The notes under the pieces: generated by a model
Database searches by the model: none
Told to the model about the DNA's origin: nothing
Seen by the model: the letters and a program-made list of their open reading frames with translations, nothing else
IMG/VR virus record: IMGVR_UViG_3300019458_000020
Coordinates: 186,814-250,813 of that record
Strand: one strand, 5' to 3'
Length of the DNA: 64,000 nt
Shown here: piece after piece, positions 8,005 to 52,926 of the stretch
Layout: each line of letters begins with the position of its first letter
Numbering within the stretch: position 1 is the stretch's first letter
Translations under genes and position numbers: made by a program

Positions 8005-8126
8005 TGGTGGTTGATGTGGAATTGAACCACACCTTCGTAATATTTTGCAACCTTTTCACGAAGTCCTGACCTTTACTCAAACGATTACTTACGCGTTTCA
8101 TCGTTTTTTCGCTTTCAGTTTCAACC
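8005..8126 (-). ncRNA. 122-nt tRNA-like RNA E with two non-tRNA hairpins
   Basis: Acceptor GGTTGA/TCAACC, T arm TGTGG-TTCAATT-CCACA, ACCA; inner stems AAACGAT/ATCGTTT and CTTCGT/ACGAAG. Confidence 0.7.
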
Positions 8127-8135
8127 ATAAAAAAA

Positions 8136-8211
8136 TGGCGCCCCATGTGGGAGTTGAACCCACACGAAATTGTTTTAGAGACAACTGCTCTACCAATTGA
8201 GCTAATGAGGC
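8136..8211 (-). tRNA. amber suppressor tRNA (anticodon CUA)
   Basis: 76-nt canonical cloverleaf: GCCTCAT/ATGGGGC, D arm GCTC/GAGC, GTTGT-CTCTAAA-ACAAT, GTGGG-TTCAACT-CCCAC, G73, CCA. Confidence 0.92.
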
Positions 8212-8295
8212 GTAATGAGGATAGAATGTTGGCTTCGGTGTTTTCACCGTTGCCTTTAGAAACCTATGTTGGTTTAATATTCATTCTATTAATAA

Positions 8296-8323
8296 CTATA
8301 TACCAATTTCGTGTTTTGTCAAG
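8296..8323 (-). promoter_or_regulatory. sigma70-like promoter of the suppressor/mini-tRNA/pth2 unit
   Basis: TTGACA-16 nt-TATAGT on the minus strand. Confidence 0.65.
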
Positions 8324-8330
8324 AAAAAAA

Positions 8331-8368
8331 TAAACCCCCAAGTTTTAACTTGAGGGTTTTGTTTATAA
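8331..8368. terminator. intrinsic terminator after the beta-barrel gene
   Basis: aaacccccaag..cttgagggtttt inverted repeat with A/T-rich flanks. Confidence 0.6.
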
Positions 8369-8397
8369 CCTATTTAATTGTAATCAGATACCGTTAA

Positions 8398-9015
8398 TTA
8401 AAACGGAAATCTAAGGCCCGCTTGGACTGCTCGGCTTCCTTGGCTCCAATGAAAATCAACATTACGATATTGAAATTCTCCGAAGGCTCGGACGTGTTTA
8501 ACAACTTGAACTTCCAGACCCGCCTTTGCAACGTATGACCAAGTATTTCCTTCTTGCCAGTTCAAAACCGTTCCCAATCCACCATAAGGTGCAACGTGTC
8601 TTAACACGGGGCACTTCTCAAAGAGAGGAGCACGGAGTAAAAGCCCAGCATGAACTTCATCAACTTGCAATCGGTCATCGGTACTCTTGTAAATCGGAAC
8701 ATTAGCTTCCAATCCAACCAACTTGGTTGGGAACCAAAAGGCGCCGACAGTCAAATTAACCGTGCGATCTCCTTCACTACGAAGTGTACGGGTTTCGTTT
8801 TGTGGATGACAATATTTATAGGAACGTTCCACTTCATTCGGAACTTCCACTGTTCGAACTGAATCAGGAGGATTCACCAAACAACCAGAACTCAAAGTGA
8901 GTCCAACTTCTCCAGCGTTAAAAAGAGAAGGCACTACAGGACTTGGTGCGGCCTTAACATTAACAACTGAAAACACCGACAAACATGCGATCAATGCGAT
9001 TAATAACTTTTTCAT
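8398..9015 (-). CDS. outer-membrane beta-barrel protein (OmpW/Ail-like size)
   Basis: Cleavable signal peptide (..VNVKA), amphipathic beta strands, C-terminal AGLRFPF signature. Confidence 0.75.
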   Translation of the reverse strand: MKKLLIALIACLSVFSVVNVKAAPSPVVPSLFNAGEVGLTLSSGCLVNPPDSVRTVEVPNEVERSYKYCHPQNETRTLRSEGDRTVNLTVGAFWFPTKLVGLEANVPIYKSTDDRLQVDEVHAGLLLRAPLFEKCPVLRHVAPYGGLGTVLNWQEGNTWSYVAKAGLEVQVVKHVRAFGEFQYRNVDFHWSQGSRAVQAGLRFPF

Positions 9016-9114
9016 TTCTTTCCTTTTGTTTTCTTGTTTTTGTTTATACGGACACTAGTCGTCCGCGTTTCACTAGGGGATTAATATACAACCGAACAAA
9101 AGACAATCAACTTT

Positions 9115-9375
9115 TTATATTTGTTTGTTTTCAATGAATTTATAAAACTCTCTGGCTGTCTTTAAAATTTCATCAGCAGCGAATAATTGACAGGAGTTAT
9201 AATTTGGAGAAGCAATGGCGTGTCTAAGACTGACTGCTAATTCCAATACATGCAATCGAATCTCGTATGCATTTTTATTGACCGTACTAATATATTTTAG
9301 TTCTTTAACTACATTCGGTGTAAGTTGAGTGAATTGCGACTCGTTTTTATCGGAGTCTTTAATAACTTTTTTCAT
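9115..9375 (-). CDS. hypothetical protein
   Basis: ORF containing the segment YEIRLHVLELA..EILKTAREFYKFIE. Confidence 0.6.
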   Translation of the reverse strand: MKKVIKDSDKNESQFTQLTPNVVKELKYISTVNKNAYEIRLHVLELAVSLRHAIASPNYNSCQLFAADEILKTAREFYKFIENKQI

Positions 9376-9454
9376 AATATTTCTTTCTGTATATGTGTGT
9401 TGATTCCAATATAGAATCCACGATACATATTATGAAATTATTCGAAGAAAATAA

Positions 9455-9769
9455 TTATAATTCGCTTCGTTGAATTTGATGAATTTGTTGGATAGTGGGT
9501 GCAATCTCTTCCAACAATCTTATAACTTGGTCCAACTTTTGCTTAGCTATATCTGTGGTAGGTTTATTCGGATGGGTTCGATATAATTCATGAAAACCCG
9601 AAACTTCATCATAAATCGTTTCTAATTGAGATATCATTTTATTCCACGGCTGACCAATCATTGTACTTGGTGCGACATTGGCTTTTAATCTCTCCAAATC
9701 CGTCAATTCTTCCTTAATGACTTCGTTGACGGTTTCTCGAATTAAAGTTTGTAATTCTTCACGTTTCAT
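9455..9769 (-). CDS. hypothetical protein
   Basis: MKREELQTLIRETVNEVI N-terminus; ATGA overlap with the upstream gene. Confidence 0.7.
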   Translation of the reverse strand: MKREELQTLIRETVNEVIKEELTDLERLKANVAPSTMIGQPWNKMISQLETIYDEVSGFHELYRTHPNKPTTDIAKQKLDQVIRLLEEIAPTIQQIHQIQRSEL

Positions 9770-10371
9770 AGTTTATACATTTTGGAGTATTTATCTCTCG
9801 AATTATGAATACTATCAACGAATTGAACGGCCCATTCTTGTTTATCTCTTGGGAAATTCTTTTTGATAATTAATTTTGCACCTTCGGGGTCAACCAAAGC
9901 AGCCAATTCTAAATTCTTTTTGATGACTCTCTTTTTTTGTTCTCCGGCGGACCAAACACGATGGTCATCGGAATAATCATGATACCAATCTACATGTTGA
10001 GAAGAAACATCTAATTGTTTTAAAACTTCTTCTGGATTTAATTCGGTTGGAGGGAAGGATTTGGCATAATTGGCATTCTGTTTCTCTTGCCACAATCTTT
10101 TTGCAACACCGTATAAATCTCTCTTAAATTTGTAAGGAGTTTTGTAAACAATTTGTCCAGTTGAACCACTATAGTCTCCGACTTTATTAAAAGAAATGTG
10201 TGCTTCATCTTTGGCCGAATCTGAACCATACGATATTGTATATCCGGACGGGTTTTGAGTTAAGAAATCAGAAATGGCGGCTTCTGCCTTCTTTATTTCT
10301 TCTTCAGGCATAGTCTCTTGAGAAGCACCCATCAAACCCTCGAATATTCTATTTCTTTGTTCTTGATTCAT
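9766..10371 (-). CDS. hypothetical protein
   Basis: 201-aa ORF, TATTTAT motif upstream. Confidence 0.7.
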   Translation of the reverse strand: MNQEQRNRIFEGLMGASQETMPEEEIKKAEAAISDFLTQNPSGYTISYGSDSAKDEAHISFNKVGDYSGSTGQIVYKTPYKFKRDLYGVAKRLWQEKQNANYAKSFPPTELNPEEVLKQLDVSSQHVDWYHDYSDDHRVWSAGEQKKRVIKKNLELAALVDPEGAKLIIKKNFPRDKQEWAVQFVDSIHNSRDKYSKMYKL

Positions 10372-10428
10372 ATTTTATAAAAGCCTATGTCTATAAATAT
10401 AAATTGGCAAGAGGAATGGACAAAAAAA

Positions 10429-10836
10429 TGGTGGACCTAGTTGGAGTTGAACCAACGTGTTGAAAACCAAAGATATCCAGCAACTACATGTTTAGTTCGT
10501 TTGTGTATTCGCCTGTATGATAAACGAACAAACTGTCAGGCATAGATTGGCATACTGGCCTTTCGAATCAGTCTTGTAATTAAAACCACAAGCAGTTCTC
10601 CCTCTGTTTTACGCCGTTTTTGACCTAGAGGAGTCAGTCAATACGACGGAACGGATATTAGGCCGCTACTGCGTTGAATTCGATTTCAACATTATTCATA
10701 TTGAAAGAAAAATCAACATTTTGCAAACGAGTAAGTTTAGCATTTATTTTTCCGTCATCTTTTTTAAGAGGCCAGACGACCAACCTCTACATGCTCTGTG
10801 TATCCTATAATCTTCAGTCGATACCATTATAGGCCC
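10429..10836 (-). ncRNA. ssrA: tmRNA, predicted tag AKLTRLQNVDFSFNMNNVEIEFNAVAA
   Basis: 5' GGGCCTATAATGGTATCGAC, 3' GGTTCAACTCC..TAGGTCCACCA with G3-U70; ATAAAT-GCT resume context at 10741, UAA at 10660-10658. Confidence 0.93.
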
Positions 10837-10865
10837 ACAAGTATCAATAAATATACTACGAAATG

Positions 10866-11360
10866 TTAAACTGTCAACTCTTTTTCAAGAAATTGAACCC
10901 AACCATCGAAATTGTAAGCTATTCCACTGTATCCAATTTTATCAAATGCCAAGGCACCTAGCTGTTTATAATAATCCGGTGAAGGTGAGGCATGAACTTT
11001 ATAGGTATATTCAAATCGTTCTTTAAATATACTTAATCCAACGATACAAGAATCCGCCACGTCAGACATGTTTCTTGATTTTATTTTTTCATCCAACAAT
11101 CCAAACGTTATTGGTTGATGAATGTATCTAACAATAGATTGAAATATTCTAACTGTGTCTTCTTCATTTTTCTGATATTGACAAAGTGTACACAGAATCC
11201 AATCGGTTCCATGTAAGGGGATAAATTTTGGTATGTCCTTTAATTGTTCGGCAATGTAACCACGAAGACGAAACTGTTGATCCGAATCCGATTCGATATA
11301 TAAATCTTTGAATGATTCGGCTTTTTTGCCATCATACATTAATTCTAGTAATCCATACAT
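10866..11360 (-). CDS. hypothetical protein
   Basis: 164-aa ORF, TATTTAT motif upstream. Confidence 0.7.
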   Translation of the reverse strand: MYGLLELMYDGKKAESFKDLYIESDSDQQFRLRGYIAEQLKDIPKFIPLHGTDWILCTLCQYQKNEEDTVRIFQSIVRYIHQPITFGLLDEKIKSRNMSDVADSCIVGLSIFKERFEYTYKVHASPSPDYYKQLGALAFDKIGYSGIAYNFDGWVQFLEKELTV

Positions 11361-11392
11361 ACCAATAAATATTGGTATAATATCTCATTGCG

Positions 11393-12013
11393 TCAAAGAA
11401 TTTCAAAGTCGCCAGTAAATTCTATGATTTCATCCCGATCATACTTTTCATCGTGTTTATGGAATGGAAATTTTTTGTTTTTAAATCTTTCTCGCATCTC
11501 ATGAGACGCATAAGGCAACAAAGATTTATTGAAAATTTTATTCATCTCAGGAGCATAGGATTCTAATTTTGAACACAATGCAGTAACTTCATTGAAAGTA
11601 ATGGAGTCTATTTCACCATATTCGGTTATATCTATTGACCCTCTTAAAAAGAAATCCATTCGTTCGGGACCACCGGACATCATCATACATTCTCTAAGTA
11701 ACATTCCTTTTTTAGAATCCAGTAATTTTATACCTAATTCTGCAAATAAAACACAACCAGAGGTTTTCTTGGTGGTGTGATGAAGCCTGTGGCCGGCTTC
11801 AACAATCACAAACGCTGCGCCTTCCTTGGTATTCCATAATTCATTAACACTTCCTACCAATCCTTTACTTATATTTTTACTGTATTCCGTCCATGCATCT
11901 TGAAATTTTCGTTCTAAAAAATATTCACTACTATTTCCGACGCACATCATACTCAATGGTATTTCAGCATCGACTTTAAAGAGAGTATCTTCTAATAAGT
12001 TTACAGGTATCAT
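11393..12013 (-). CDS. hypothetical protein
   Basis: 206-aa ORF in operon. Confidence 0.7.
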   Translation of the reverse strand: MIPVNLLEDTLFKVDAEIPLSMMCVGNSSEYFLERKFQDAWTEYSKNISKGLVGSVNELWNTKEGAAFVIVEAGHRLHHTTKKTSGCVLFAELGIKLLDSKKGMLLRECMMMSGGPERMDFFLRGSIDITEYGEIDSITFNEVTALCSKLESYAPEMNKIFNKSLLPYASHEMRERFKNKKFPFHKHDEKYDRDEIIEFTGDFEIL

Positions 12014-12741: not shown

Positions 12742-13758
12742 CTAATACAAACGATTTAACTTTGGTTCTGTTACTAACCGTTTTTTATATTTCACCCAAT
12801 CACTCTCCCAGATATAAAAAACCTCATAACCAATCGACCTCAAACGATTTAATCGTTCCATAGTTTTATTGTATAAAAATCCATAAGTCACTCCTTTGGC
12901 TTTGTTCATGTCTCCGAGGTTATATCGTTCCGGATTACCATGCCAATAATCGCCTAAAAATTCATATATGGTATTATCTATGATTCCATCCACAACCATA
13001 GAGTCTATTGATTGTTGTCTTTTAATAATTCCATAGTGGTCAAGAAATTCTTTTTCAATTGGGGATTCATATCGATTCCAAGAACACTCGATACACGGAG
13101 CAGACTTTTTTTCATATAAAATAGCTTGATACCTACAAGTATATTCTACTTCTTTTTTACAAAACGAACATATTCTACACCATTTTTTTATATGTTCTTT
13201 AAAGAAAATACCATCCACTTGTTTTTTTCTATGTTTTCTTGTAATTAATTTTATATTTGATTTTTTTGTTAAATAATTTGTATGACATATCATACAATTT
13301 CTATTTTTTATTTCGGATTGAACCGCGTTGTCTTTTCGACTGTATTCTGTTTCTTTTTTACATTTTGGACAAATTCTACACCAAAACCCGTTTTTATTTA
13401 AAAATACATTATTATATATTTTTGGAGATTTCATAGAATCTCTCATTTTTTGTTTTGTTTCTTCTGAAACTTTGTGATTTTTATTCCTACAAGCACCACA
13501 TAATTTATTATTATTAAACGAAACTTTGGCGTTCCATTTGTGTGAAAAAACAATCTCCTTGTTACAATCAGGACATTTTTACACCATTTAGATTGTGGAT
13601 TTTTATAAATCATTGACGTTGTTAAATTTAAAGTGGATATATTGTTCCTTTTTCTTTTGATTAATCTTATCCTTGTTTCTCAAGTAATACTCCATCTGTC
13701 TTTTACGACGGGCAATTAGTTGTTCCTCTTCAGTGATATACTTTTTATGTCTTCCCAT
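12742..13758 (-). pseudogene. zinc-finger plus Vsr/DUF559-like endonuclease, frameshifted at the 5' end
   Basis: Repeated WCRICPKC/WCRICSFC fingers and EFLGDYWHGNP...IWESDW; intact frame 12742-13446, upstream frame broken near 13580 (tgg tgt aaa aa tgt). Confidence 0.7.
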
Positions 13759-22714: not shown

Positions 22715-22803
22715 GGGCGTGTGGCGAAGCTGGTTGAACCGCGGCAGACTTAAAATCTGCTACTTAGGAAACATCGGGGGTTCGATTCCCTCCACGCCTA
22801 CCA
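22715..22803 (+). tRNA. tRNA-Leu(UAA)
   Basis: GCAGA-CTTAAAA-TCTGC, long variable arm, GGTTCGATTCC, ACCA. Confidence 0.95.
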
Positions 22804-23545
22804 TTTTAGGGTCATGTCTTCGGGACCAAATATTTATCTTCTTGACATCAATACCATTTCTAAGTGCGTGTTTTTTAACACTACTAGCAGATACTTTTAA
22901 TTTTCTAGCAACTTCTGATATGGGATTGTTGGATAATAGAGAAATCATTTCTTCATTTGAAGGCCATTTGATTTTTATCTTGAAAACATTTCCAACAGAT
23001 GAATAACGGCTTCTTATGGTTTCTATTCTTTTTTGTTGTTCTTCATAAATTTTCGATTGTAGGAAATGAATTCCACGTTTTTCAATCAAATCATTGATTC
23101 GGTAGTAGTTTCCCCCATAACCAACAAGTCCACATTTTAATAATGCTTCTCTTCGTGTATAAGATGATTCTATGGATATTATCAATTCTTCATCCGTGAC
23201 GTAATGGCCTTTCTTTTGTTTTTTTCTAGCTCTATAATTTGGAGTCAATGCATGACAATTACAACAAAAAAGTTTAAGATTTTCCAATTCATTATTTTTT
23301 CTATTGCCATCGACATGATGTAATTCTAACGGAATTGATTCATTTTTCCATTTTGTCAACTGGCAACCTTCACATCGATGTTCTTTTACACCATCTTTTA
23401 TTAGTTTAAGTTTTAATCTAAAAGTTGTCATGGTTATACATATACAACAAGTGTGAGTTCTAGTTAATTTAATTCTTGACTCTCTTTGAAAATCTGATAC
23501 TCTCATCCTATGATTGAAGTTCCACGACTTCCACGGATTACTCAT
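22760..23545 (-). CDS. HNH homing endonuclease
   Basis: HRCEGC..PLELHHVDGNRKNNELENL..CCNCHA; convergent on tRNA-Leu; true start uncertain. Confidence 0.85.
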   Translation of the reverse strand: MSNPWKSWNFNHRMRVSDFQRESRIKLTRTHTCCICITMTTFRLKLKLIKDGVKEHRCEGCQLTKWKNESIPLELHHVDGNRKNNELENLKLFCCNCHALTPNYRARKKQKKGHYVTDEELIISIESSYTRREALLKCGLVGYGGNYYRINDLIEKRGIHFLQSKIYEEQQKRIETIRSRYSSVGNVFKIKIKWPSNEEMISLLSNNPISEVARKLKVSASSVKKHALRNGIDVKKINIWSRRHDPKMVGVEGIEPPMFPK

Positions 23546-24236: not shown

Positions 24237-25331
24237 ATGAAAATTGATTTGGCTTCGATTGACCGTGAACAATTCATGGTTCACGAACACATTCTTTTTG
24301 GGGAAGTCGTGTATCTCGTCCAACCACAACATATTGGTTGTAAGTGGACACAGGCCAATAAACATCTCCGGTCTGCTGTCTTCAATTCTGAAGGTGAACT
24401 GATTTCAATGGGTTTTCCCAAATTCACAAACTGGAGCGAAAACCCGGACAACTTCCCTGTTCCTACTTCTCTGAATGGTTGTAAGGTTATGGAGAAGCTT
24501 GATGGTTCTCTTTTGATTGTTTCCAAATACAAGGGTCAATTCATCCTTCGTACTCGTGGCACCATTAATGCCGAAAACCTTGACAACGGCCATGAACTGG
24601 CTTTGTTGAAACAGAAGTATCCAGAAATCTTTAAGTTTCAATCTTGTGGAATGGAAACTTGGCCGTTTTCTCTTTTGTTTGAATGGGTTTCTCCTATTAA
24701 TCGAATTGTTTTGAGTTACGGCGATGAAGCGGATTTCATTTTGGTTGGTGGTATCTACCATGACAAATGCATTCTTTGGGACCAAGAGTGGTTAGACGCA
24801 ATGGCCAAGGGTTTTGGTTGTAAACGTCCGATTACATATAACTTTCCTTCTGTAGATGACTTAATTGCCAATGTTGACCAGTGGAAAGGCAAAGAGGGAG
24901 TTGTTATCTATTCCAAAGACGGTCAAGCTCTCCATAAAGTTAAATCGGCTTGGTATCTCGTTTTACATAGAATGAAGGAATCCTTATCATCCATTGATAA
25001 AGTTGTGGATGTTTGGTTTGTTCAGGGGAAATTACCATATCAAGAATTTGAAGAATATATTACATCGACTTTTGATTGGGAATTGTGGAATCAAATTCGG
25101 GGAGAAGTTAGCCAAATTTGTGATGGTTGGAAAGAAGTTCAACGAATAGTTCAAGGTATGAAATCGTTCGTTGAACCGCTAAATACCTGGTCAAGAAAAG
25201 ATGCAGCAAAAAAGATTATTGATTCATACGGAATCACTAATCGAAGTTCCTTTTGTTTTCAATTGTTAGATGGAAAAGAATTATGTGACGATGCTCTAAA
25301 AAAACTTTTGTGGCAAGTTCTCAAAAAGTAA
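24237..25331 (+). CDS. RNA ligase, T4 Rnl1-like
   Basis: FPKFTNW..EKLDGSL (motif I)..FEW..EGVVI..KVKSAWY. Confidence 0.88.
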   Translation: MKIDLASIDREQFMVHEHILFGEVVYLVQPQHIGCKWTQANKHLRSAVFNSEGELISMGFPKFTNWSENPDNFPVPTSLNGCKVMEKLDGSLLIVSKYKGQFILRTRGTINAENLDNGHELALLKQKYPEIFKFQSCGMETWPFSLLFEWVSPINRIVLSYGDEADFILVGGIYHDKCILWDQEWLDAMAKGFGCKRPITYNFPSVDDLIANVDQWKGKEGVVIYSKDGQALHKVKSAWYLVLHRMKESLSSIDKVVDVWFVQGKLPYQEFEEYITSTFDWELWNQIRGEVSQICDGWKEVQRIVQGMKSFVEPLNTWSRKDAAKKIIDSYGITNRSSFCFQLLDGKELCDDALKKLLWQVLKK

Positions 25332-35474: not shown

Positions 35475-35873
35475 ATGAAAGATAAAATCTTAGAACTTCA
35501 CAATTCAGGAAAATCATATAGAGAAATAAGACAAATTTTAGGATGTTCACATTCTCTCATTTCTTACTATGTTAACCCGGATGGCAAAACAAAACAACTC
35601 CAAAGACAAAATAAAAATCGTTTTATAAAAAGAGAAAAATACAAGTTATCTATGGGAGGAAAATGTTGTAAATGTGGATATGACCGTTGTCTTGCAGCCT
35701 TGCATTTTCATCATAAAAACCCAGAAGAAAAAAAGTTTTTGTTAAGTTCTGCTATGTGGGGAGTAAATTCAATAACCGAAGAAGATATCTTAAATGAAAT
35801 TAAGAAATGTGACTTGATTTGTGCAAATTGTCACGCAGAGTATCATTATCCAAATACTCTCAAGAAATGGTAG
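35475..35873 (+). CDS. HNH homing endonuclease with N-terminal HTH
   Basis: KCCKCGY..ALHFHH..CDLICANCHAEYH; stop overlaps the tRNA-fMet 3' end. Confidence 0.85.
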   Translation: MKDKILELHNSGKSYREIRQILGCSHSLISYYVNPDGKTKQLQRQNKNRFIKREKYKLSMGGKCCKCGYDRCLAALHFHHKNPEEKKFLLSSAMWGVNSITEEDILNEIKKCDLICANCHAEYHYPNTLKKW

Positions 35874-36787: not shown

Positions 36788-36848
36788 ATAACGAACATAT
36801 CACAAATAAAATAATTGTCAATCGCATTCTTGTTATACATATCAGATA

Positions 36849-37681
36849 TGACAAATACATTAAAGACCGAAAAGATAAGTGGAATATACAAAATTATCAA
36901 TAATATCAATGATAAATACTACGTTGGTAGTTCAAATAACATTTACAAACGATGGAAATATCACAAGCAAGATTTAAATCGAGGCAATCACAGGTCACAA
37001 TATTTGCAACGTGCGTGGAACAAATACGGTGAAGATAATTTTACTTTTGTAGTCACCGAATTAATTATATTGGATGAATTACTTTTACAAATAGAACAAG
37101 AATATCTTAATATTGCTTGTCAAGAAAAGGAAAAATGTTATAATTCATCTTTTGTTGCTGGAAAAATTGAAATGAATGAGATTACGAGAAACAAAATAAG
37201 TCAATCTCACAAAGGAAAGAAATTATCCAAGGAAACAAAAGAAAAGTTACGGCAATGTAATTTAGGAAAAAGATTATCAGAAGAAACTAAAAAGAAAATT
37301 AGTGATGCACACAAAGGAAAAGTTTTAAGTCAACCCAAAGGATGGCATCATACCGAAGAATCAAAGAAAAAAATTAGCCAGAAATTAAAAGGAAAATATG
37401 TTGGAATATTGAGTCATAAATTTGGTACTAAACATACTGAAGAATGGAAAAAACAATGGAGAGAAAGACTGAAAAATCATCATCCGAGGTTAGACAAAAC
37501 TGTATATCGATTTCAAAACGAAGTTACCAACGAAGTTTTTGACGGGTTGCAGTTTGATTTTAGAGTAAAATATAACATTCCTCCAGGAAATTTATGTCAT
37601 ATAATTCGAGGAAGGAGAAAATCTATACAAGGATGGAAATTGGTGGTCCGACCGGGATTCGAACCCGGAACAAAGCTTTAG
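36849..37681 (+). CDS. GIY-YIG homing endonuclease with NUMOD3-type repeats
   Basis: SGIYKI..YYVGSS..HRSQYLQRAWNKYG; repeated SxETKxKIS..HKGK; convergent on tRNA-Arg. Confidence 0.9.
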
Positions 37682-47200: not shown

Positions 47201-47515
47201 TTATATACACTCCAATACTTCAGCGAACGCTCGATTCAAATCTCCTTGGTCACAGGCAAGGGGATAACCTTCTGGACCATACTTTGAAATAATATCCTTG
47301 ATTCGTTGACGTGCAGGAGACTTCAAGAATGTTTCACGTTTGATTCTTTGTTCATTAGCTTTTCTTGTGGCTTCTTCTTCCGTCAAACCCGTTCCACAAA
47401 CTACTCTTCCATCTGAACAGAATAGAAATTGTCTCCAATAACTTTCATGGAAACCCATACAATTTTCTCCGTTTACTAAATGTGGTGGTTCATCTTTATT
47501 AATGATAGTATTCAT
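47201..47515 (-). CDS. hypothetical protein
   Basis: ATGA overlap with the ligase. Confidence 0.65.
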   Translation of the reverse strand: MNTIINKDEPPHLVNGENCMGFHESYWRQFLFCSDGRVVCGTGLTEEEATRKANEQRIKRETFLKSPARQRIKDIISKYGPEGYPLACDQGDLNRAFAEVLECI

Positions 47516-48381
47516 TGGATTTTAGAACGGAGATAATTCTTATACATTTCAACGGTCTTTTTGCCGACGGATTTCTTTACGGCTTCGGATTCCACAATTT
47601 CTCCCTTACCTTCTCTCAAAACATCTTCTGTCATGGCAGAGATAATATCTCTCATTTTTTCCATACAATGTCCTGGCAATTTATCCAAGACATGTTCTAG
47701 TCGCATCAAAGTCACCCACTCGTCCGCAACGGCGTTGGCATCATCCAACACTTTAAGTTGTGAAGGGTCAACAACAGGTCTTGGTGTGGATGTTTCTTTG
47801 AAAGAATCTCCCTTATGTTTACAAATAAGTCTCTCACCATTGCTTAGAGTAATTTCAATCAAAGGCCGGAGGACGACACCTTCCCGCTTTTTTGGTTCTG
47901 TGATTCCATTTCTTACTGACTGAACACTTGGTTTGTCTCGTTCGGCATCCAAAGCCACAAGGTCAGTAGAAACTTTTGTATAATCGACAAATTCGAGGCC
48001 CAATTTCTTTGCTATATCCGCAGCGTCCGGAACTGATAACCAACAATCACCAATTTGAACATCGAAGACAACGAATTTTAGTTCCTTTCCGTAAGTTGCC
48101 GACATTCCTTGTTGACTTCCGCCGTAAGCTTCACCAAAAACTGTTACATCTTTGTCAATAGGCGAACCAAGGTCTTTGAATTGTTGAATTAAATTTGTTT
48201 CATCAAACAAAGCTACGAAACGTACGTGACTTTCTCCACCAGAGAAGTAACGAATACTTCCATCTGACGGACGAAACGTGACGTGTGCATAGGTTCCATG
48301 AATTTTCTCCAAGGCATAACATTCCTTAAACAAAAGGATTGTCTGTTCTTTATACAAGTTACTAATGTGTAAATACCCGAT
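47512..48381 (-). CDS. RNA ligase, Rnl2-like family
   Basis: EKIHGT (motif I), FGEAYG, FDVQI, REGVVLRP, ICKHK; probable AUC start at 48381. Confidence 0.85.
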   Translation of the reverse strand: MGYLHISNLYKEQTILLFKECYALEKIHGTYAHVTFRPSDGSIRYFSGGESHVRFVALFDETNLIQQFKDLGSPIDKDVTVFGEAYGGSQQGMSATYGKELKFVVFDVQIGDCWLSVPDAADIAKKLGLEFVDYTKVSTDLVALDAERDKPSVQSVRNGITEPKKREGVVLRPLIEITLSNGERLICKHKGDSFKETSTPRPVVDPSQLKVLDDANAVADEWVTLMRLEHVLDKLPGHCMEKMRDIISAMTEDVLREGKGEIVESEAVKKSVGKKTVEMYKNYLRSKIQ

Positions 48382-49807: not shown

Positions 49808-51725
49808 CAGAATCGGCTTCCTCCTGTTTTATCATCGCCTGATGTATATACGCCCTATCTCCAAACGGATACCCCCATAGTTCCCATCCCTGTTCTAAGT
49901 ATTTATTAACGGCATTAGTTAAACATGATGGAGTTTCGCTGAGAATTTTGTATTTAATGATAGTATTCATAATTAATGGTAAAGTAATTTGTCATGATTT
50001 ATTTCCTACATTCTTTTTATCTTATCACTCGTAGAATATTTTCCATAAAAATTGATAAATTTCTTTTTGTCTTTGAAGTTCGTCTTTGCAAGATTGAACC
50101 GACTCTATACAATATCTAACAGATTCATTAGCCGCATCAGATTTTGGACAAACACCTAAATTATCTGCATCTAATTGATGAGCCCATTCTTTTCTAACTT
50201 CTGCTGAAGCTAATTCAGACTGAGATTGGATAAGATTTTCTGTACATCTATCGACTTCACATTGAATGAGTCTTAGAACGTATTTCGCTTTGTCAGCATC
50301 GGTCATTGTTTTCATAATGGAATGGCTGGACACCAAGCACCATGTCTATTTTCAGAGGAGTGTCCGTCTTTATCTTTAATTTCTTGTAGATATCTTTCCC
50401 AAGCAGAAATTGTCTGATCAAGAAATCCGGCTTCCCATTGAAGCAAACAATCTCTTGCACAAACAACTCCACGTTCATGACCCAAAGCACCATCAACTAA
50501 TTCAACAATTTGAACGATACGTCTTTGTTCATTCATTGGTAAAATCCTGTGATTGATAGTCTTCTTCAAGTTCACTCAAATCGCTAAATACTTCTAATAT
50601 CATTGTATCTTCATCCGTCAACCATCCTTCGGAATTTAAGTATTCATAGGCAGTTCTTCCGTCTCTCCATTGAAGCTCTAATTGGTCTTCGGCACTCAAT
50701 CCTTCATATTCTCCATAAATAGAAATAACTTTGTGCCATTGTTGCCAGTTAGATTCAAGAATGACCACCAACTGTTCATTTAAAACGTGTTTAGTTTTTG
50801 ACATATTATGATAATTCTACAGTAAGTTTAGTTTTTACCGATTTGGGAAGGGCCTCAATAATTCGGTAATCCTCTTTTTGATTATTTTCCACCCATTTAC
50901 GAAGTTCCTCCATCCCCTCGGGAGTATTATTAAATGCAATATATGTCACTATCGACTTATAATGTGCTGGATATCCGTGACCGGGACATTGAATACTTCG
51001 TTCGTCGCCGGGAACATAAACAGAATCAAGATGAAGAACGGCTGTATGTGGAACGGCGGGAAAGTCGGAACTTTGGGAACAGTATTTCATATTATTTCTT
51101 TCTATTTCTCTTTTTTGTAAAAGTGAATGTGGCCGGATAATAATTTTCATTGTATCCGGGTTTATCATATTCTACCTTCCATCCATTTTTCTCAAAAATG
51201 GGCTCAATATCAAGATAACCGGCATTAAATATTTCATCTCCGTTAATCTTTCCGTTATATTTAGTAATAATTTCATCAACTAATTCATTTTGAGTGAACT
51301 CGGCGTTTTGTTTTTGGTCACTCCAATTATTTACTATGCATTCATTGACAGCCTTAATAACCAAAGGAGGAATTTTTTTCGATTTAACTTTGCCTACATC
51401 TTCTGGTCTAATTGGTTTCATATTAGTATAAATCTTCACTAAATAATTCTTTTGAATTAAATTTTAGTTTTTTTATTTGTCCACGTTGTAAAGCAATTTT
51501 TGCTGCCTCTTCTCTATCAACAAATTTTCCATCATCCGTTACGAATCCTTGTGTATGTTCTCCACCAACTTTTTTGACTCCGGTTTCAGCAATAATTTTA
51601 CTAATTACATCATGGTGTCTTCTTCCAGTAAAAACTACTCCGTTGAATAGTATTGCTGACTCCTTTATCATATTATGCCACTTTACGTTCCTTTCTTTCA
51701 AGAATAGGCAACTCCCTACCGTCAA
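49782..51725 (-). CDS. run of short hypothetical ORFs (49782-49970, 50025-50336, 50312-50575, 50529-50804, 50806-51168, 51092-51439, 51423-51725)
   Basis: Consecutive overlapping minus-strand ORFs. Confidence 0.6.
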
Positions 51726-52926
51726 CCACGTCTTCTGTAATCTTACAAGAAACTACATCACTATTAGGAATATCAAACATGACATTCAACATGAGTTTTT
51801 CGACCAATCCACGAAGAGCACGGGCACCTGTTCCTTTTTTAATGGCGATGTTGGCCAAACGTTTCAAGGCTTCATCCGTAAAATTCAAGGAAACACCTTC
51901 CAATTCAAATAACTTTGTATATTGACGAATCAAGGCATTCCTTGGTTTGGTCAAAATATCAATCAACTGAGATTCAGTCAATGGTTTAAGAGAAGTAATC
52001 ATAGGCAACCGACCAATGAATTCAGGAATGAATCCGAATTCAGCCAAATCCTCCGGTTCCACATGTTCTAAAATTTCAGACGAAGAAATTTCTTCTTCTG
52101 GAATAAATGTATCTCTGAATCCCATTGTTCTACCAGAAGCACCATCCATACGTTTCCGAACAATATTTTCCAATCCATTAAAAGCACCACCACAGATAAA
52201 AAGAATCGAACTGGTATCAACTTTAATATATTCTTGTCCGGGATGTTTTCTTCCACCTTGAGGCGGCACATTACAAATAGTTCCTTCGATAATTTTTAAT
52301 AGTGCCTGTTGAACACCTTCACCAGAAACGTCTCTCGTAATTGAAGGTCCATTACTTTTCTTGGTAATTTTATCAATTTCATCAATGTAAACAATTCCCT
52401 GTTGTGCCTTTTGAACATCGAAGTCGGCATTTTGTAAAAGACGAAGAATCACATTCTCCACGTCTTCACCGACATAACCGGCTTCAGTAAGTGTAGTGGC
52501 ATCAGAAATAGAAAAAGGAACACCCAATGATTTTGCCAAAGAACGTGCCAGAAGAGTTTTTCCTGAACCTGTATTTCCGATAAGAAGAATGTTACTCTTT
52601 TCTAATTCCACTTCACCGGCTTTATTTTCATGTAACAGTCTTTTATAATGATTGTGAACAGCTACGGAAAGAGTCCTCTTTGTATGTTCTTGTCCAATAC
52701 AATATTCATCAAGACCTTCTTTGACTTCGATTGGTAGGGGAATTTTGGAAATGGTCTTTGGTGCCTTTCCGGCGAGCTTGAGAGATTCTTTATCCATCAC
52801 ACTTTGACATAGAGTGACGCAATTATTACAAATATATACCCCCGGCCCCTGAATCAATTTTTGAACTTCGGCATGGGATTTACCACAGAAACTACACATT
52901 GTTGTTGGGGTTTTCTTTGAACTCAT
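51673..52926 (-). CDS. clpX: ATP-dependent Clp protease ATP-binding subunit ClpX
   Basis: CSFCGKS zinc domain, [47 protein letters not shown] loop. Confidence 0.97.

What the first reader, a model, noticed from the sequence alone, without database searches (positions are those of the whole stretch)
8136..8211. Intact amber suppressor tRNA in a phage that otherwise appears to use the standard code
Seen: canonical 76-nt cloverleaf with loop CU-CUA-AA, G1-C72, U4-G69 and G73. Long genes (clpX, helicase, ligases) are not interrupted by TAG. The genuine stops I checked are mostly TAA/TGA, with TAG at 12742 and 35873. Established: suppressor tRNAs typically accompany genome-wide recoding in phages. 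Inference: here it serves selective readthrough or an early stage of recoding. The charged amino acid cannot be read from the sequence; G73 is compatible with Gln, Trp, Ser and others.
Basis: partly seen in the sequence, partly recalled or inferred. Interest (0 to 1): 0.72.

Follow-up and report, generated by a model that had tools for sequence, protein, structure and literature searches.

The report
Amber tRNA gates neighbouring PTH2 gene
The phage's amber-suppressor tRNA is real, and its most likely job is to read a stop codon placed at the very start of the peptidyl-tRNA hydrolase gene next to it. The same tRNA-plus-gated-gene arrangement recurs in dozens of uncultured giant phages, and in some bacterial genome bins, that otherwise use the standard genetic code.

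Summary
Window 8136-8211 (-) is a canonical 76-nt tRNA with anticodon CUA, and the 250.8-kb phage contig reads well under the standard code.

The new result is a target for this tRNA. About 540 nt downstream on the same strand lies a PTH2-family peptidyl-tRNA hydrolase gene. Its reading frame is ATG-4 codons-TAG-..., and its first core beta-strand is encoded between that TAG and the first usable start codon.

The arrangement is conserved:
- About 50 distinct relatives (IMG/VR, metagenomes, Verrucomicrobiota MAGs) have an in-frame stop in the PTH2 leader.
- 34 of them show a suppressor tRNA upstream on the same strand in the DNA fetched.
- The anticodon matches the stop in 34 of 34 cases: 33 CUA/TAG and one UUA/TAA.
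- All six whole genomes examined use code 11 and carry exactly one suppressor tRNA. In one genome it is the only tRNA.
- A small helical protein of unknown function follows PTH2 in 38 of 54 loci.

"Selective readthrough" is therefore supported. "Early-stage recoding" is not the main story, although TAG stops are unusually rare here (2.8%).

Why PTH2 is gated is inferred, not shown. No expression or charging data exist. I found no published description in the library searched.

The parts
8295..8322 (-). Sigma-70-like promoter match (TTGACA, 16 nt, TATAGT; 11 of 12) about 84 nt upstream of the tRNA. It is preceded by a terminator-like hairpin at 8332-8359.
   Evidence: This is a consensus match only, and the host's promoter type is unknown.
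8136..8211 (-). Canonical elongator-type tRNA with anticodon CUA (amber suppressor). It has an encoded CCA, G73, and a run of T directly after it.
   Evidence: Orthologues show compensatory changes in 14 of 16 aligned stem pairs.
7615..8135 (-). Spacer between the tRNA and the PTH2 leader. It holds three tRNA-like T-arm/acceptor 'minihelix' elements ending in ACCA, with T-loop motifs at 7770-7780, 7959-7969 and 8018-8028.
   Evidence: 12 T-loop motifs in the window against 0.33 expected, three of them here; partial tRNA match at 7948-7999, 24.9 bits. In most relatives this spacer is only 11-47 nt.
7612..7614 (-). ATG start of the PTH2 leader, which reads M-N-N-E-Y-[TAG].
   Evidence: The closest relative, L132, has M-N-N-E-H-[TAG]. 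L113 has M-K-Q-[TAG] behind an AAGGA ribosome-binding-like motif.
7597..7599 (-). In-frame TAG at codon 6 of PTH2, the proposed target of the tRNA.
   Evidence: There is no ATG, GTG or TTG between this TAG and the end of the beta1 strand.
7222..7614 (-). Complete PTH2-family peptidyl-tRNA hydrolase ORF of 130 codons, including the amber. It ends in TGA, which overlaps the next gene's ATG (ATGA).
   Evidence: With the TAG read through, the Pfam PF01981 match is 93.2 bits over profile positions 1-115 of 115. The truncated ORF gives 80.2 bits over positions 12-115. Solved Pth2 chains align from their residues 2-7. The AlphaFold2 model has pLDDT 92.7, with beta1 at residues 7-13 after the stop. 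The ATGA overlap is shown.
6821..7225 (-). Conserved 134-aa all-helical protein of unknown function, translationally coupled to PTH2. It is the third member of the module.
   Evidence: A homologue lies directly after PTH2 in 38 of 54 gated loci. There is no Pfam or PHROG match. The AlphaFold2 model has pLDDT 93.5. There is no significant PDB fold match.
10429..10836 (-). Phage-encoded tmRNA, 2.2 kb upstream. This is translation-rescue context, not shown to be part of the cassette.
   Evidence: 107.5 bits. A tmRNA is also present in G001, G002 and G005, and lies 2 kb from PTH2 in L122.

Best explanation
The tRNA(CUA) is a dedicated decoder for one gene, the PTH2 peptidyl-tRNA hydrolase just downstream on the same strand.

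Proposed mechanism:
1. PTH2 translation starts at a short leader, ATG plus 1-5 codons, and immediately meets an in-frame UAG.
2. If release factor 1 wins at that codon, only a tiny peptide is made.
3. If the charged suppressor tRNA wins, the ribosome continues through the first beta-strand and makes the full 130-aa enzyme.

PTH2 output is therefore a translational AND gate. It requires the PTH2 transcript and an expressed, intact, charged suppressor tRNA, and it is set by competition between that tRNA and release factor.

The amber lies in a non-conserved N-terminal leader, so almost any inserted amino acid would do.

A small helical protein is co-translated behind PTH2 and probably acts with it.

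What is shown:
- the tRNA gene
- the in-frame stop
- the need for readthrough to encode the fold
- conservation of the pair
- matching of anticodon to stop type

What is inferred:
- that the tRNA is expressed and charged
- that gating serves to limit, delay or stress-couple PTH2 synthesis, for example raising PTH2 when termination is slow or when the suppressor is active
For: 1. Target in the window. The in-frame TAG is at 7597-7599, and beta1 (RLYALIR) lies between it and the first start codon. The Pfam match grows from profile positions 12-115 to 1-115 when the TAG is read through. Solved Pth2 chains align from their N-termini. The AlphaFold2 model places beta1 at residues 7-13 with high confidence.

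2. Translation through the region. Among 53 distinct relatives, the codons between the stop and the first start codon keep the amino acid while varying synonymously. For example, one Arg column uses 6 different codons in 52 of 53 sequences.

3. Conservation.
- Of 89 distinct PTH2 leaders, 50 have an in-frame stop with no start codon before beta1 (49 TAG, 1 TAA).
- 34 of those have a suppressor tRNA upstream on the same strand. Among the 36 with at least 500 nt of upstream DNA, 28 do.
- The tRNA's 3' end lies a median of 46 nt from the stop.

4. Covariation. The anticodon matches the stop in 34 of 34 cases. The single UUA tRNA (L111) sits before a leader with two TAA codons, and it is nested inside the amber clade.

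5. Controls. PTH2 genes with ordinary starts form a separate clade (support 97/97) and lack suppressor tRNAs. This includes every GenBank phage PTH2 I inspected.

6. Whole genomes. G000-G005 all read as code 11, and each has exactly one suppressor tRNA, the one beside PTH2. In G004 it is the only tRNA in 203 kb. In G007 the gated PTH2 has its CUA tRNA 27 kb away.

7. The tRNAs are under selection as tRNAs. 14 of 16 aligned stem pairs show compensatory changes. 35 of 38 encode CCA. The anticodon loop is CUCUAAA in 31 of 38.

8. Stop context. The nucleotides around the stop are conserved as ACR-TAG-GTW. Many leaders carry two stops. This argues for a maintained gate rather than a neutral accident.
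Against: - There is no expression, processing or aminoacylation evidence. No RNA run was listed, and the source is cave-metagenome DNA.
- In five loci the tRNA ends only 11-23 nt before the TAG, with no in-frame start codon between them. Initiation in those loci is unexplained.
- One complete 543-kb genome (G008) has an amber-leader PTH2 but no CUA tRNA that ARAGORN could find.
- In this window the tRNA is about 536 nt from the TAG, much farther than the 46-nt median, and it looks like a separate transcription unit.
- The inserted amino acid is unknown. The discriminator base varies (A in 20, G in 14, U in 1), and no consistent isotype resemblance emerged.
- The adaptive reason for gating is not established.
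Confidence: 0.75

Rival explanations
1. Early or intermediate stage of genome-wide TAG reassignment (codon capture). TAG stops have been purged, a suppressor has been acquired, and in-frame TAGs are only beginning to appear.
For: TAG ends only 9 of 323 called genes (2.8%). Four of the nine are ORFs that end inside tRNA genes. Among the remaining five, two of the better-supported genes have a back-up stop within 0-2 codons; the others have one 4-43 codons downstream. The share is far below that of G005 at the same GC (16.6%; Fisher p = 7e-10). Borges et al. describe a standard-code phage with a suppressor and only 2.7% of the cognate stop as a possible precursor.
Against: The same tRNA-PTH2 pair occurs in deeply diverged standard-code genomes where TAG is 15-17% of stops. 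It also occurs with an ochre suppressor in a genome where TAA is 25% of stops. Only PTH2 carries the in-frame stop, and no excess of amber leaders or split genes was found. Structural genes are intact in code 11. No RF gene was found.
Confidence: 0.08
2. The suppressor's main role is global: readthrough of host or competitor UAG stops, as host takeover or counter-defence. PTH2, the tmRNA and ClpX clean up the resulting stalled ribosomes and peptidyl-tRNAs. The amber in PTH2 merely scales the clean-up to suppressor activity. This overlaps with the best explanation rather than excluding it.
For: A translation-rescue toolkit sits nearby: tmRNA at 10429-10836, PTH2, ClpX, RNA ligases and a CCA-adding enzyme. 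A tmRNA lies close to the pair in L122 as well. TAG stops are depleted in G000-G002.
Against: G004 carries the suppressor as its only tRNA and has no tmRNA, yet uses the cognate stops freely. Chromosomal copies occur in Verrucomicrobiota MAGs, where a strong global suppressor would be costly. No host target is known.
Confidence: 0.12
3. The TAG is a genuine stop. The ATG-x-TAG unit is a regulatory mini-ORF (bar-minigene-like, or termination-reinitiation), PTH2 starts internally, and the tRNA is only a neighbour.
For: The commonest leader, ATG-ACR-TAG, has the form of a two-codon minigene. Minigenes are classically linked to Pth (own knowledge of lambda bar/rap). In the window the tRNA may be a separate transcription unit.
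Against: Beta1 would be lost. The codons after the stop evolve as coding sequence without any start codon. The codon after the stop is GTT or GTA, not GTG. The stop type tracks the anticodon, including TAA with UUA.
Confidence: 0.04
4. The tRNA is a pyrrolysine or other special tRNA, or an amber initiator tRNA.
For: ARAGORN labels it 'Pyl' because of the CUA anticodon. Five loci lack a start codon before the TAG.
Against: The cloverleaf is canonical, with G18G19, a TTC loop, a 5-bp anticodon stem and a 5-nt variable loop. G1-C72 is paired in 35 of 35, and there are no three G-C pairs next to the anticodon loop. These features fit an elongator tRNA and not tRNA-Pyl or an initiator (feature lists from my own knowledge).
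Confidence: 0.01

Closest known systems
TAG-recoded (code 15) phages with suppressor tRNAs: crAss-like, Lak and others (Borges et al. preprint 10.1101/2021.08.26.457843; Peters et al. PMC9523058)
   Same: A phage-encoded tRNA(CUA) reads in-frame TAG in phage genes. The recoding is proposed to regulate translation.
   Different: Here one gene is recoded, not many late or lytic genes. The stop sits in a short N-terminal leader. The tRNA is cis-linked to its target. Coding density is normal under code 11, and no RF2 gene was found.
Orphan suppressor tRNAs of standard-code jumbo phages: XacN1 with two CUA tRNAs, Atu_ph07 with UCA (PMC5852040, PMC6102473)
   Same: Standard-code jumbo phages with suppressor tRNAs and PTH-family genes. 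No target was identified by C-terminal readthrough.
   Different: Their PTH2 genes start normally and are not next to the suppressor. Those suppressors remain unexplained by this cassette.
prfB (RF2) autoregulation through an early in-frame UGA (own knowledge)
   Same: An early in-frame stop makes the output of a translation-factor gene depend on competition with a release factor.
   Different: prfB escapes the stop by +1 frameshifting and needs no tRNA gene. Here escape is by a dedicated suppressor tRNA, and the gene product is not the release factor.
Pyrrolysine system: pylT (CUA) clustered with the genes that serve UAG-containing methyltransferase genes (own knowledge; PMC12626013 for ambiguity of amber use)
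   Same: A dedicated tRNA(CUA) serves a few specific in-frame UAG codons in an otherwise standard-code genome.
   Different: There is no dedicated synthetase or biosynthesis genes, the tRNA shape is canonical, and the recoded position lies in a leader tolerant of any residue.
Synthetic amber-suppressor AND gates: a supD tRNA plus a polymerase gene carrying amber codons (own knowledge, not checked in the library)
   Same: The logic is identical. The output protein is made only if both its mRNA and a suppressor tRNA are present, and two amber codons increase stringency.
   Different: That system is engineered. This one is natural, conserved and physically linked.
Lambda bar minigenes and host Pth (rap) (own knowledge)
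   Same: A two-codon ORF followed by a stop, functionally tied to peptidyl-tRNA hydrolase.
   Different: bar minigenes are toxic decoys separate from pth. Here the mini-ORF is the 5' end of the hydrolase gene itself and continues in frame.

Membership tests
tRNA (canonical elongator) | Cloverleaf scoring above the Rfam RF00005 gathering threshold, with conserved D-loop and T-loop nucleotides | tested here: met
   66.3 bits against 29. G18G19, T54T55C56 and 7/4/5/5-bp stems are present. Orthologues covary in their stems.
Amber suppressor tRNA | Anticodon CUA in a 7-nt loop with U33 and a purine at position 37 | tested here: met
   The loop is CU-CUA-AA. The same loop occurs in 31 of 38 orthologues.
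Amber suppressor tRNA | Is expressed, aminoacylated and decodes UAG in vivo | not testable with these tools
   No RNA run was listed. The only indirect support is the conserved in-frame UAG target and the anticodon-stop covariation.
tRNA-Pyl | Atypical shape: short D-loop without G18G19, 6-bp anticodon stem, 3-nt variable loop (own knowledge) | tested here: not met
   The tRNA has a canonical D-loop with GG, a 5-bp anticodon stem and a 5-nt variable loop.
tRNA-Pyl | Accompanying pylS and pylBCD genes | not tested
   No search for these genes was made.
Bacterial initiator tRNA | 1:72 mismatch and three G-C pairs closing the anticodon stem (own knowledge) | tested here: not met
   G1-C72 is paired in 35 of 35. 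The window tRNA's anticodon stem is GUUGU/ACAAU.
Code-15 (TAG-recoded) phage | Low coding density under code 11 that recovers when TAG is read as sense | tested here: not met
   Coverage by ORFs of 100 aa or more is 0.822 under code 11 and 0.848 with TAG as sense. That is a smaller gain than from reading TGA or TAA as sense.
Code-15 (TAG-recoded) phage | Many genes, typically structural or lysis genes, interrupted by in-frame TAG | tested here: not met
   Portal, sheath and RNR are intact. There are no convincing TAG-split genes. Amber leaders are not enriched over TAA or TGA controls.
PTH2 peptidyl-tRNA hydrolase (PF01981) | Full-length match above the Pfam cut-off | tested here: met
   93.2 bits against 23, over profile positions 1-115 of 115, once the TAG is read through.
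PTH2 peptidyl-tRNA hydrolase (PF01981) | PTH2 fold, and sequence similarity to solved Pth2 enzymes | tested here: met
   The match to solved Pth2 chains is by sequence: 2zv3, 1xty, 1wn2 and 1q7s at E = 1e-15 to 1e-10. A separate AlphaFold2 model has pLDDT 92.7 and pTM 0.87. The model was not itself compared with solved structures.
PTH2 peptidyl-tRNA hydrolase (PF01981) | Hydrolase activity on peptidyl-tRNA | not testable with these tools
   Only invariant K, D, T and GP positions in the alignments are available as indirect evidence.

The most novel reading that the evidence does not exclude
The tRNA, the stop-gated PTH2 and the helical partner form a natural, mobile translational sensor-effector module.
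- An early in-frame stop read by a private suppressor tRNA measures the balance between tRNA supply and release-factor activity.
- PTH2 is switched on only under defined translational conditions, such as termination stress or attack on tRNAs by host defence or toxin systems.
- The module is shared between giant phages and bacterial chromosomes. In one Verrucomicrobiae MAG it sits beside a PIN-domain gene.
- If true, this would be a new class of gene regulation by single-gene genetic-code expansion.
Probability: 0.3. Interest if true: 0.9.

Novelty: new variant of a known kind. Interest (0 to 1): 0.8.

Why it matters
Suppressor tRNAs in phages that plainly use the standard code have been a loose end. 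Earlier authors found no targets, or read them as precursors of recoding.

Here a concrete, conserved target appears: one gene, cis-linked to the tRNA, with anticodon and stop type changing together. This has three consequences.
- It shows that stop-codon reassignment can be confined to a single gene as a regulatory device.
- It supplies a natural counterpart of the engineered amber-suppressor AND gate.
- It flags systematic mis-annotation. Gene callers truncate these PTH2 genes and label the tRNA 'Pyl'.

It also ties a phage translation-rescue enzyme to a measurable switch. The switch can be tested directly with reporters, tRNA northern blots and mass spectrometry.

Tried and rejected
- DNA similarity of window 6000-12000 to GenBank phages gave no match.
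- Exact-pattern scans for the tRNA body or anticodon arm gave no match in genome contigs and ten matches in viral contigs. None of the ten is a tRNA(CUA).
- Isotype assignment by similarity gave mixed Trp, Lys, Arg and Thr hits with no consistent answer.
- A search for TAG-split genes and other amber-leader genes in six genomes found nothing beyond PTH2.
- Every cultured or GenBank phage PTH2 inspected starts normally and has no adjacent suppressor tRNA. These were phiM12, Myrna, Atu_ph07, CcrRogue, RsoM2USA, Xoo-sp13, SCTP-2, EBPR siphovirus 2, LR756508/11, XacN1, 7t3 and A4.
- No RF-1 domain gene was found in the genome.
- Sequencing-run search found only two DNA runs, both cave metagenome. 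No RNA run was listed.
- The helical partner has no Pfam or PHROG family, no informative Atlas lead and no significant PDB fold match.
- Complex prediction of PTH2 with the helical partner returned no verdict (score 0.01). This is no evidence either way.
- A T4-type portal was not found in the three Verrucomicrobiota MAGs that carry the cassette.
- Literature searches found no paper linking a suppressor tRNA to an in-frame stop in PTH2. The library is not exhaustive.

Full report
**1. The observation**

ARAGORN finds ten RNA genes in the window. One is a 76-nt tRNA with anticodon CTA at 8136-8211 on the - strand. Rfam's tRNA model scores it 66.3 bits against a threshold of 29.

It also has an encoded CCA, G18G19, a TTC loop and a 5-nt variable loop. 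It is therefore an ordinary class I elongator shape. It is not the atypical tRNA-Pyl shape, and with a paired 1:72 and no G-C run next to the loop it is not an initiator.

ClpX, an SNF2 helicase and two RNA ligases are uninterrupted.

**2. The genome and its code**

The window is the last 64 kb of a single 250,813-bp virus contig. The contig has 35.8% GC, 41 tRNAs and one tmRNA, and is about 74% complete. It encodes a T4-type portal and an RNR, both with inteins, a tail sheath, and a CCA-adding enzyme fused to a GNAT domain.

The nearest named phages by portal are Microcystis phage Mel-JY01 (58%) and Flavobacterium phage immuto (55%). The DNA comes from cave metagenomes.

ORFs of 100 aa or more under code 11 cover 0.85-0.99 of each 10-kb bin over the first 160 kb. 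Reading TAG as sense adds less than reading TGA or TAA as sense. I found no gene convincingly split by TAG. The genome uses the standard code.

TAG is nevertheless a rare stop.
- It ends 9 of 323 crudely called genes (2.8%).
- Four of the nine are ORFs ending inside tRNA genes on the opposite strand.
- Two of the better-supported TAG-ending genes have a back-up stop within 0-2 codons.
- The share is far lower than in a relative with the same GC (16.6%; p = 7e-10).

**3. The neighbour**

Downstream on the same strand lies an ORF that Pfam identifies as PTH2 peptidyl-tRNA hydrolase. The match starts only at profile position 12.

Translating further upstream in the same frame gives M-N-N-E-Y-[TAG]-T-Q-G-N-T-Y-R-L-Y-A-L-I-R-T-D-L-G-M-E-P-G-K.... 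The missing N-terminal strand (RLYALIR) is encoded between the TAG (7597-7599) and the first ATG, GTG or TTG.

Several results show that this strand belongs to the protein.
- With the TAG read as X, the Pfam match becomes full length: profile positions 1-115 of 115, 93.2 bits against 80.2.
- Solved Pth2 chains from archaea and human align from their residues 2-7.
- An AlphaFold2 model of the post-stop sequence (pLDDT 92.7) places this segment as the first strand of the model, at residues 7-13.

The enzyme therefore cannot be made intact unless the amber is read.

**4. Relatives**

I searched IMG/VR and metagenome contigs with PTH2 and scanned the loci with ARAGORN. The result was a sharp pattern.
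- Of 89 distinct PTH2 leader sequences, 50 have an in-frame stop with no start codon between it and beta1 (49 TAG, 1 TAA).
- 34 of those have a suppressor-anticodon tRNA upstream on the same strand. Among the 36 loci with at least 500 nt of upstream DNA, 28 do.
- The tRNA's 3' end lies a median of 46 nt before the stop.
- The anticodon fits the stop in 34 of 34 cases.

The one tRNA with anticodon UUA (L111) precedes a leader with two TAA codons. Its PTH2 is nested within the amber clade. That is the expected outcome if the tRNA decodes the leader.

The 39 PTH2 genes classed as having ordinary starts are almost all of the MxxxYKQVIVVR type. Three of the 39 (L119, L138, L194) also have an in-frame TAG and a CUA tRNA upstream, and really belong with the gated set; none of the other 36 has a suppressor tRNA upstream. 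In the tree, 43 of the 45 ordinary-start sequences, including every GenBank phage PTH2 placed in it, form a separate clade with 97/97 support. XacN1, 7t3 and A4 were checked separately and also start normally.

Two further points bear on whether the leader is translated.
- Codons between the stop and the first start evolve as coding sequence. The amino acids are kept while synonymous codons vary freely; one Arg column, for example, uses six codons in 52 of 53 sequences.
- The nucleotides around the stop are conserved as ACR-TAG-GTW. Several lineages carry two stops in the leader.

The tRNAs themselves have diverged strongly but keep the cloverleaf through compensatory changes in 14 of 16 aligned pairs. 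They also keep the CUCUAAA loop and an encoded CCA.

**5. Whole genomes**

I fetched five relatives completely. All read as code 11, with coverage of 0.88-0.91. Each has exactly one suppressor tRNA, the one next to PTH2.
- G004 (203 kb, 60% GC) has no other tRNA at all. It uses TAA for 25% and TAG for 28% of its stops.
- G003 and G005 use TAG for 15-17% of their stops.
- No other gene class shows an excess of amber leaders.
- In G007 the gated PTH2 lacks an adjacent tRNA, but a CUA tRNA lies 27 kb away.

One exception remains. G008, a complete 543-kb genome, has an amber-leader PTH2 but no CUA tRNA that ARAGORN could find.

**6. A third component and the wider setting**

A small all-helical protein follows PTH2 in 38 of 54 gated loci. 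In the window it is at 6821-7225, 134 aa, and its ATG overlaps the PTH2 TGA as ATGA. It has no family, no informative fold match, and no verdict from complex prediction.

Genes upstream of the tRNA are not conserved, so the unit behaves as a module.

The module also occurs in four Verrucomicrobiota MAG contigs. One is a 1.83-Mb contig, where the module lies between a glycoside hydrolase gene and a PIN-domain gene. No T4-type portal was found in the three of these MAGs that were searched.

In one large subclade, the 39-47-nt spacer between tRNA and PTH2 carries a TTGACA-17-TATAAT promoter with the ATG 6-7 nt after the -10 element. This predicts a leaderless mRNA beginning AUG-ACR-UAG.

In the window the spacer is long (about 536 nt) and contains three tRNA-like T-arm/acceptor minihelices. 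The tRNA has its own promoter-like site and a T-run after it.

**7. How it most likely works**

Shown:
- the gene pair
- the in-frame stop
- the structural need for readthrough
- long-term conservation
- anticodon-stop covariation

Inferred:
- The tRNA is expressed and charged by a host synthetase.
- At the leader UAG it competes with RF1.
- Only when it wins is PTH2 made, together with the coupled helical protein.

Because the amber lies in a variable leader, the identity of the inserted residue is probably unimportant. This fits the variable discriminator base (A in 20, G in 14, U in 1).

The purpose of the gate is uncertain. Three readings are consistent with the data: a strict limiter or timer on PTH2, a coupling of PTH2 dose to suppressor activity, or a sensor of termination or tRNA stress. 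Persistence of the stop, with duplication in many lineages and a conserved context, argues for selection on the gate rather than a neutral accident.

**8. Comparison with what is known**

Phage suppressor tRNAs reading in-frame TAG are known from code-15 phages. Orphan suppressors in standard-code jumbo phages are known, but without identified targets. A recent jumbo-phage survey discusses suppressors only in recoded genomes.

I found no paper in the held library describing a suppressor tRNA linked to a stop-gated PTH2. I therefore rate this a new variant of a known kind: single-gene, cis-linked stop-codon recoding in standard-code genomes.

**9. Limits**

- Gene calls are my own crude ORF-scoring calls.
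- The contig is incomplete.
- There is no RNA or protein evidence.
- Five loci lack any start codon between the tRNA and the TAG.
- G008 lacks a recognisable cognate tRNA.
- The function of the gate and of the helical partner is unknown.

Noticed in passing
window 7756-8036 (-): T-loop motifs at 7770-7780, 7959-7969 and 8018-8028; partial tRNA match at 7948-7999: Three tRNA-like acceptor/T-arm 'minihelices' ending in ACCA lie between the suppressor tRNA and PTH2. They lack D and anticodon arms. They could be decayed tRNAs or functional minihelix RNAs. Relatives mostly lack this insertion.
   Followed up: partly
L101 7335-7414; L103 4908-4986; L138 2332-2411; L145 3114-3193; L109 4610-4700: About 200-400 nt downstream of PTH2, relatives carry tRNA-like genes with normal acceptor, D and T arms but aberrant anticodon arms. 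ARAGORN reports a four-base 'gcaa' anticodon or A34 anticodons. Their function is unknown.
   Followed up: partly
window 10429-10836 (-): A phage-encoded tmRNA with an unusually long tag peptide (27 residues, ending AVAA) lies 2.2 kb from the cassette. The same window also encodes ClpX (51673-52926). A tmRNA is also present in three of the five relatives sequenced in full.
   Followed up: partly
whole contig G000 (window = 186814-250813): TAG ends only 2.8% of called genes, against 15-17% in two relatives that carry the same cassette. G001 and G002 are intermediate at 5-6%. Suppression may be more efficient in this lineage.
   Followed up: partly
G004 (record of L111), 202,975 bp: This 60%-GC phage genome has a single tRNA gene, the UUA (ochre) suppressor beside a PTH2 with two in-frame TAA codons. 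It still uses TAA and TAG for about half of its own stops.
   Followed up: partly
L105, L143, L109, L145, L108 (= L103): The tRNA's CCA end lies only 11-23 nt before the leader TAG, with no in-frame ATG, GTG or TTG between them. The short pyrimidine-rich linker includes CCUCC in two loci. How translation starts there is unexplained.
   Followed up: no
L142, L146, L153 and about 15 further loci (spacer of 39-47 nt): A TTGACA-17-TATAAT promoter fills the spacer between tRNA and PTH2, with the ATG 6-7 nt after the -10 element. This predicts a leaderless mRNA starting AUG-ACR-UAG.
   Followed up: partly
L314 (Verrucomicrobiae MAG contig of 1.83 Mb; tRNA-CUA at 10383-10456; PIN-domain ORF at 11541-11936): The cassette also sits in a large bacterial MAG contig, between a GxGYxYP glycoside hydrolase gene and a PIN-domain (VapC-like) gene. 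No T4-type portal was found in that genome. It may be a chromosomal or mobile-island copy.
   Followed up: partly
window 36815-37681 (+), 35475-35873 (+), 22760-23545 (-): Several ORFs end in TAG inside tRNA genes on the opposite strand. One of them (36815-37681) is a GIY-YIG/NUMOD3 homing endonuclease overlapping tRNA-Arg.
   Followed up: partly
L006 6420-9539 (-); L002 1834-5133 (-); L004 10469-12649 (+): The portal and ribonucleotide reductase genes each carry an intein with an HNH/NUMOD3 endonuclease. The CCA-adding enzyme is fused to an N-terminal GNAT acetyltransferase domain.
   Followed up: no
window 24237-25331 (+) and 47512-48357 (-): Two RNA ligase genes are present, one of them T4 Rnl1-like. 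Together with the many tRNAs, the CCA-adding enzyme and PTH2, they suggest an extensive tRNA repair and maintenance toolkit.
   Followed up: no
window 61247-61257 (+): A T-loop consensus motif (GGTTCAAATCC) lies outside any called tRNA gene.
   Followed up: no
L309 1271-1348; L311 1325-1402 (Psychromonas and Bosea genomes): A more distant PTH2 subfamily in proteobacterial genomes has no leader stop. It has odd tRNA-like genes (called with 'att' and 'aat' anticodons) about 200 nt upstream.
   Followed up: no
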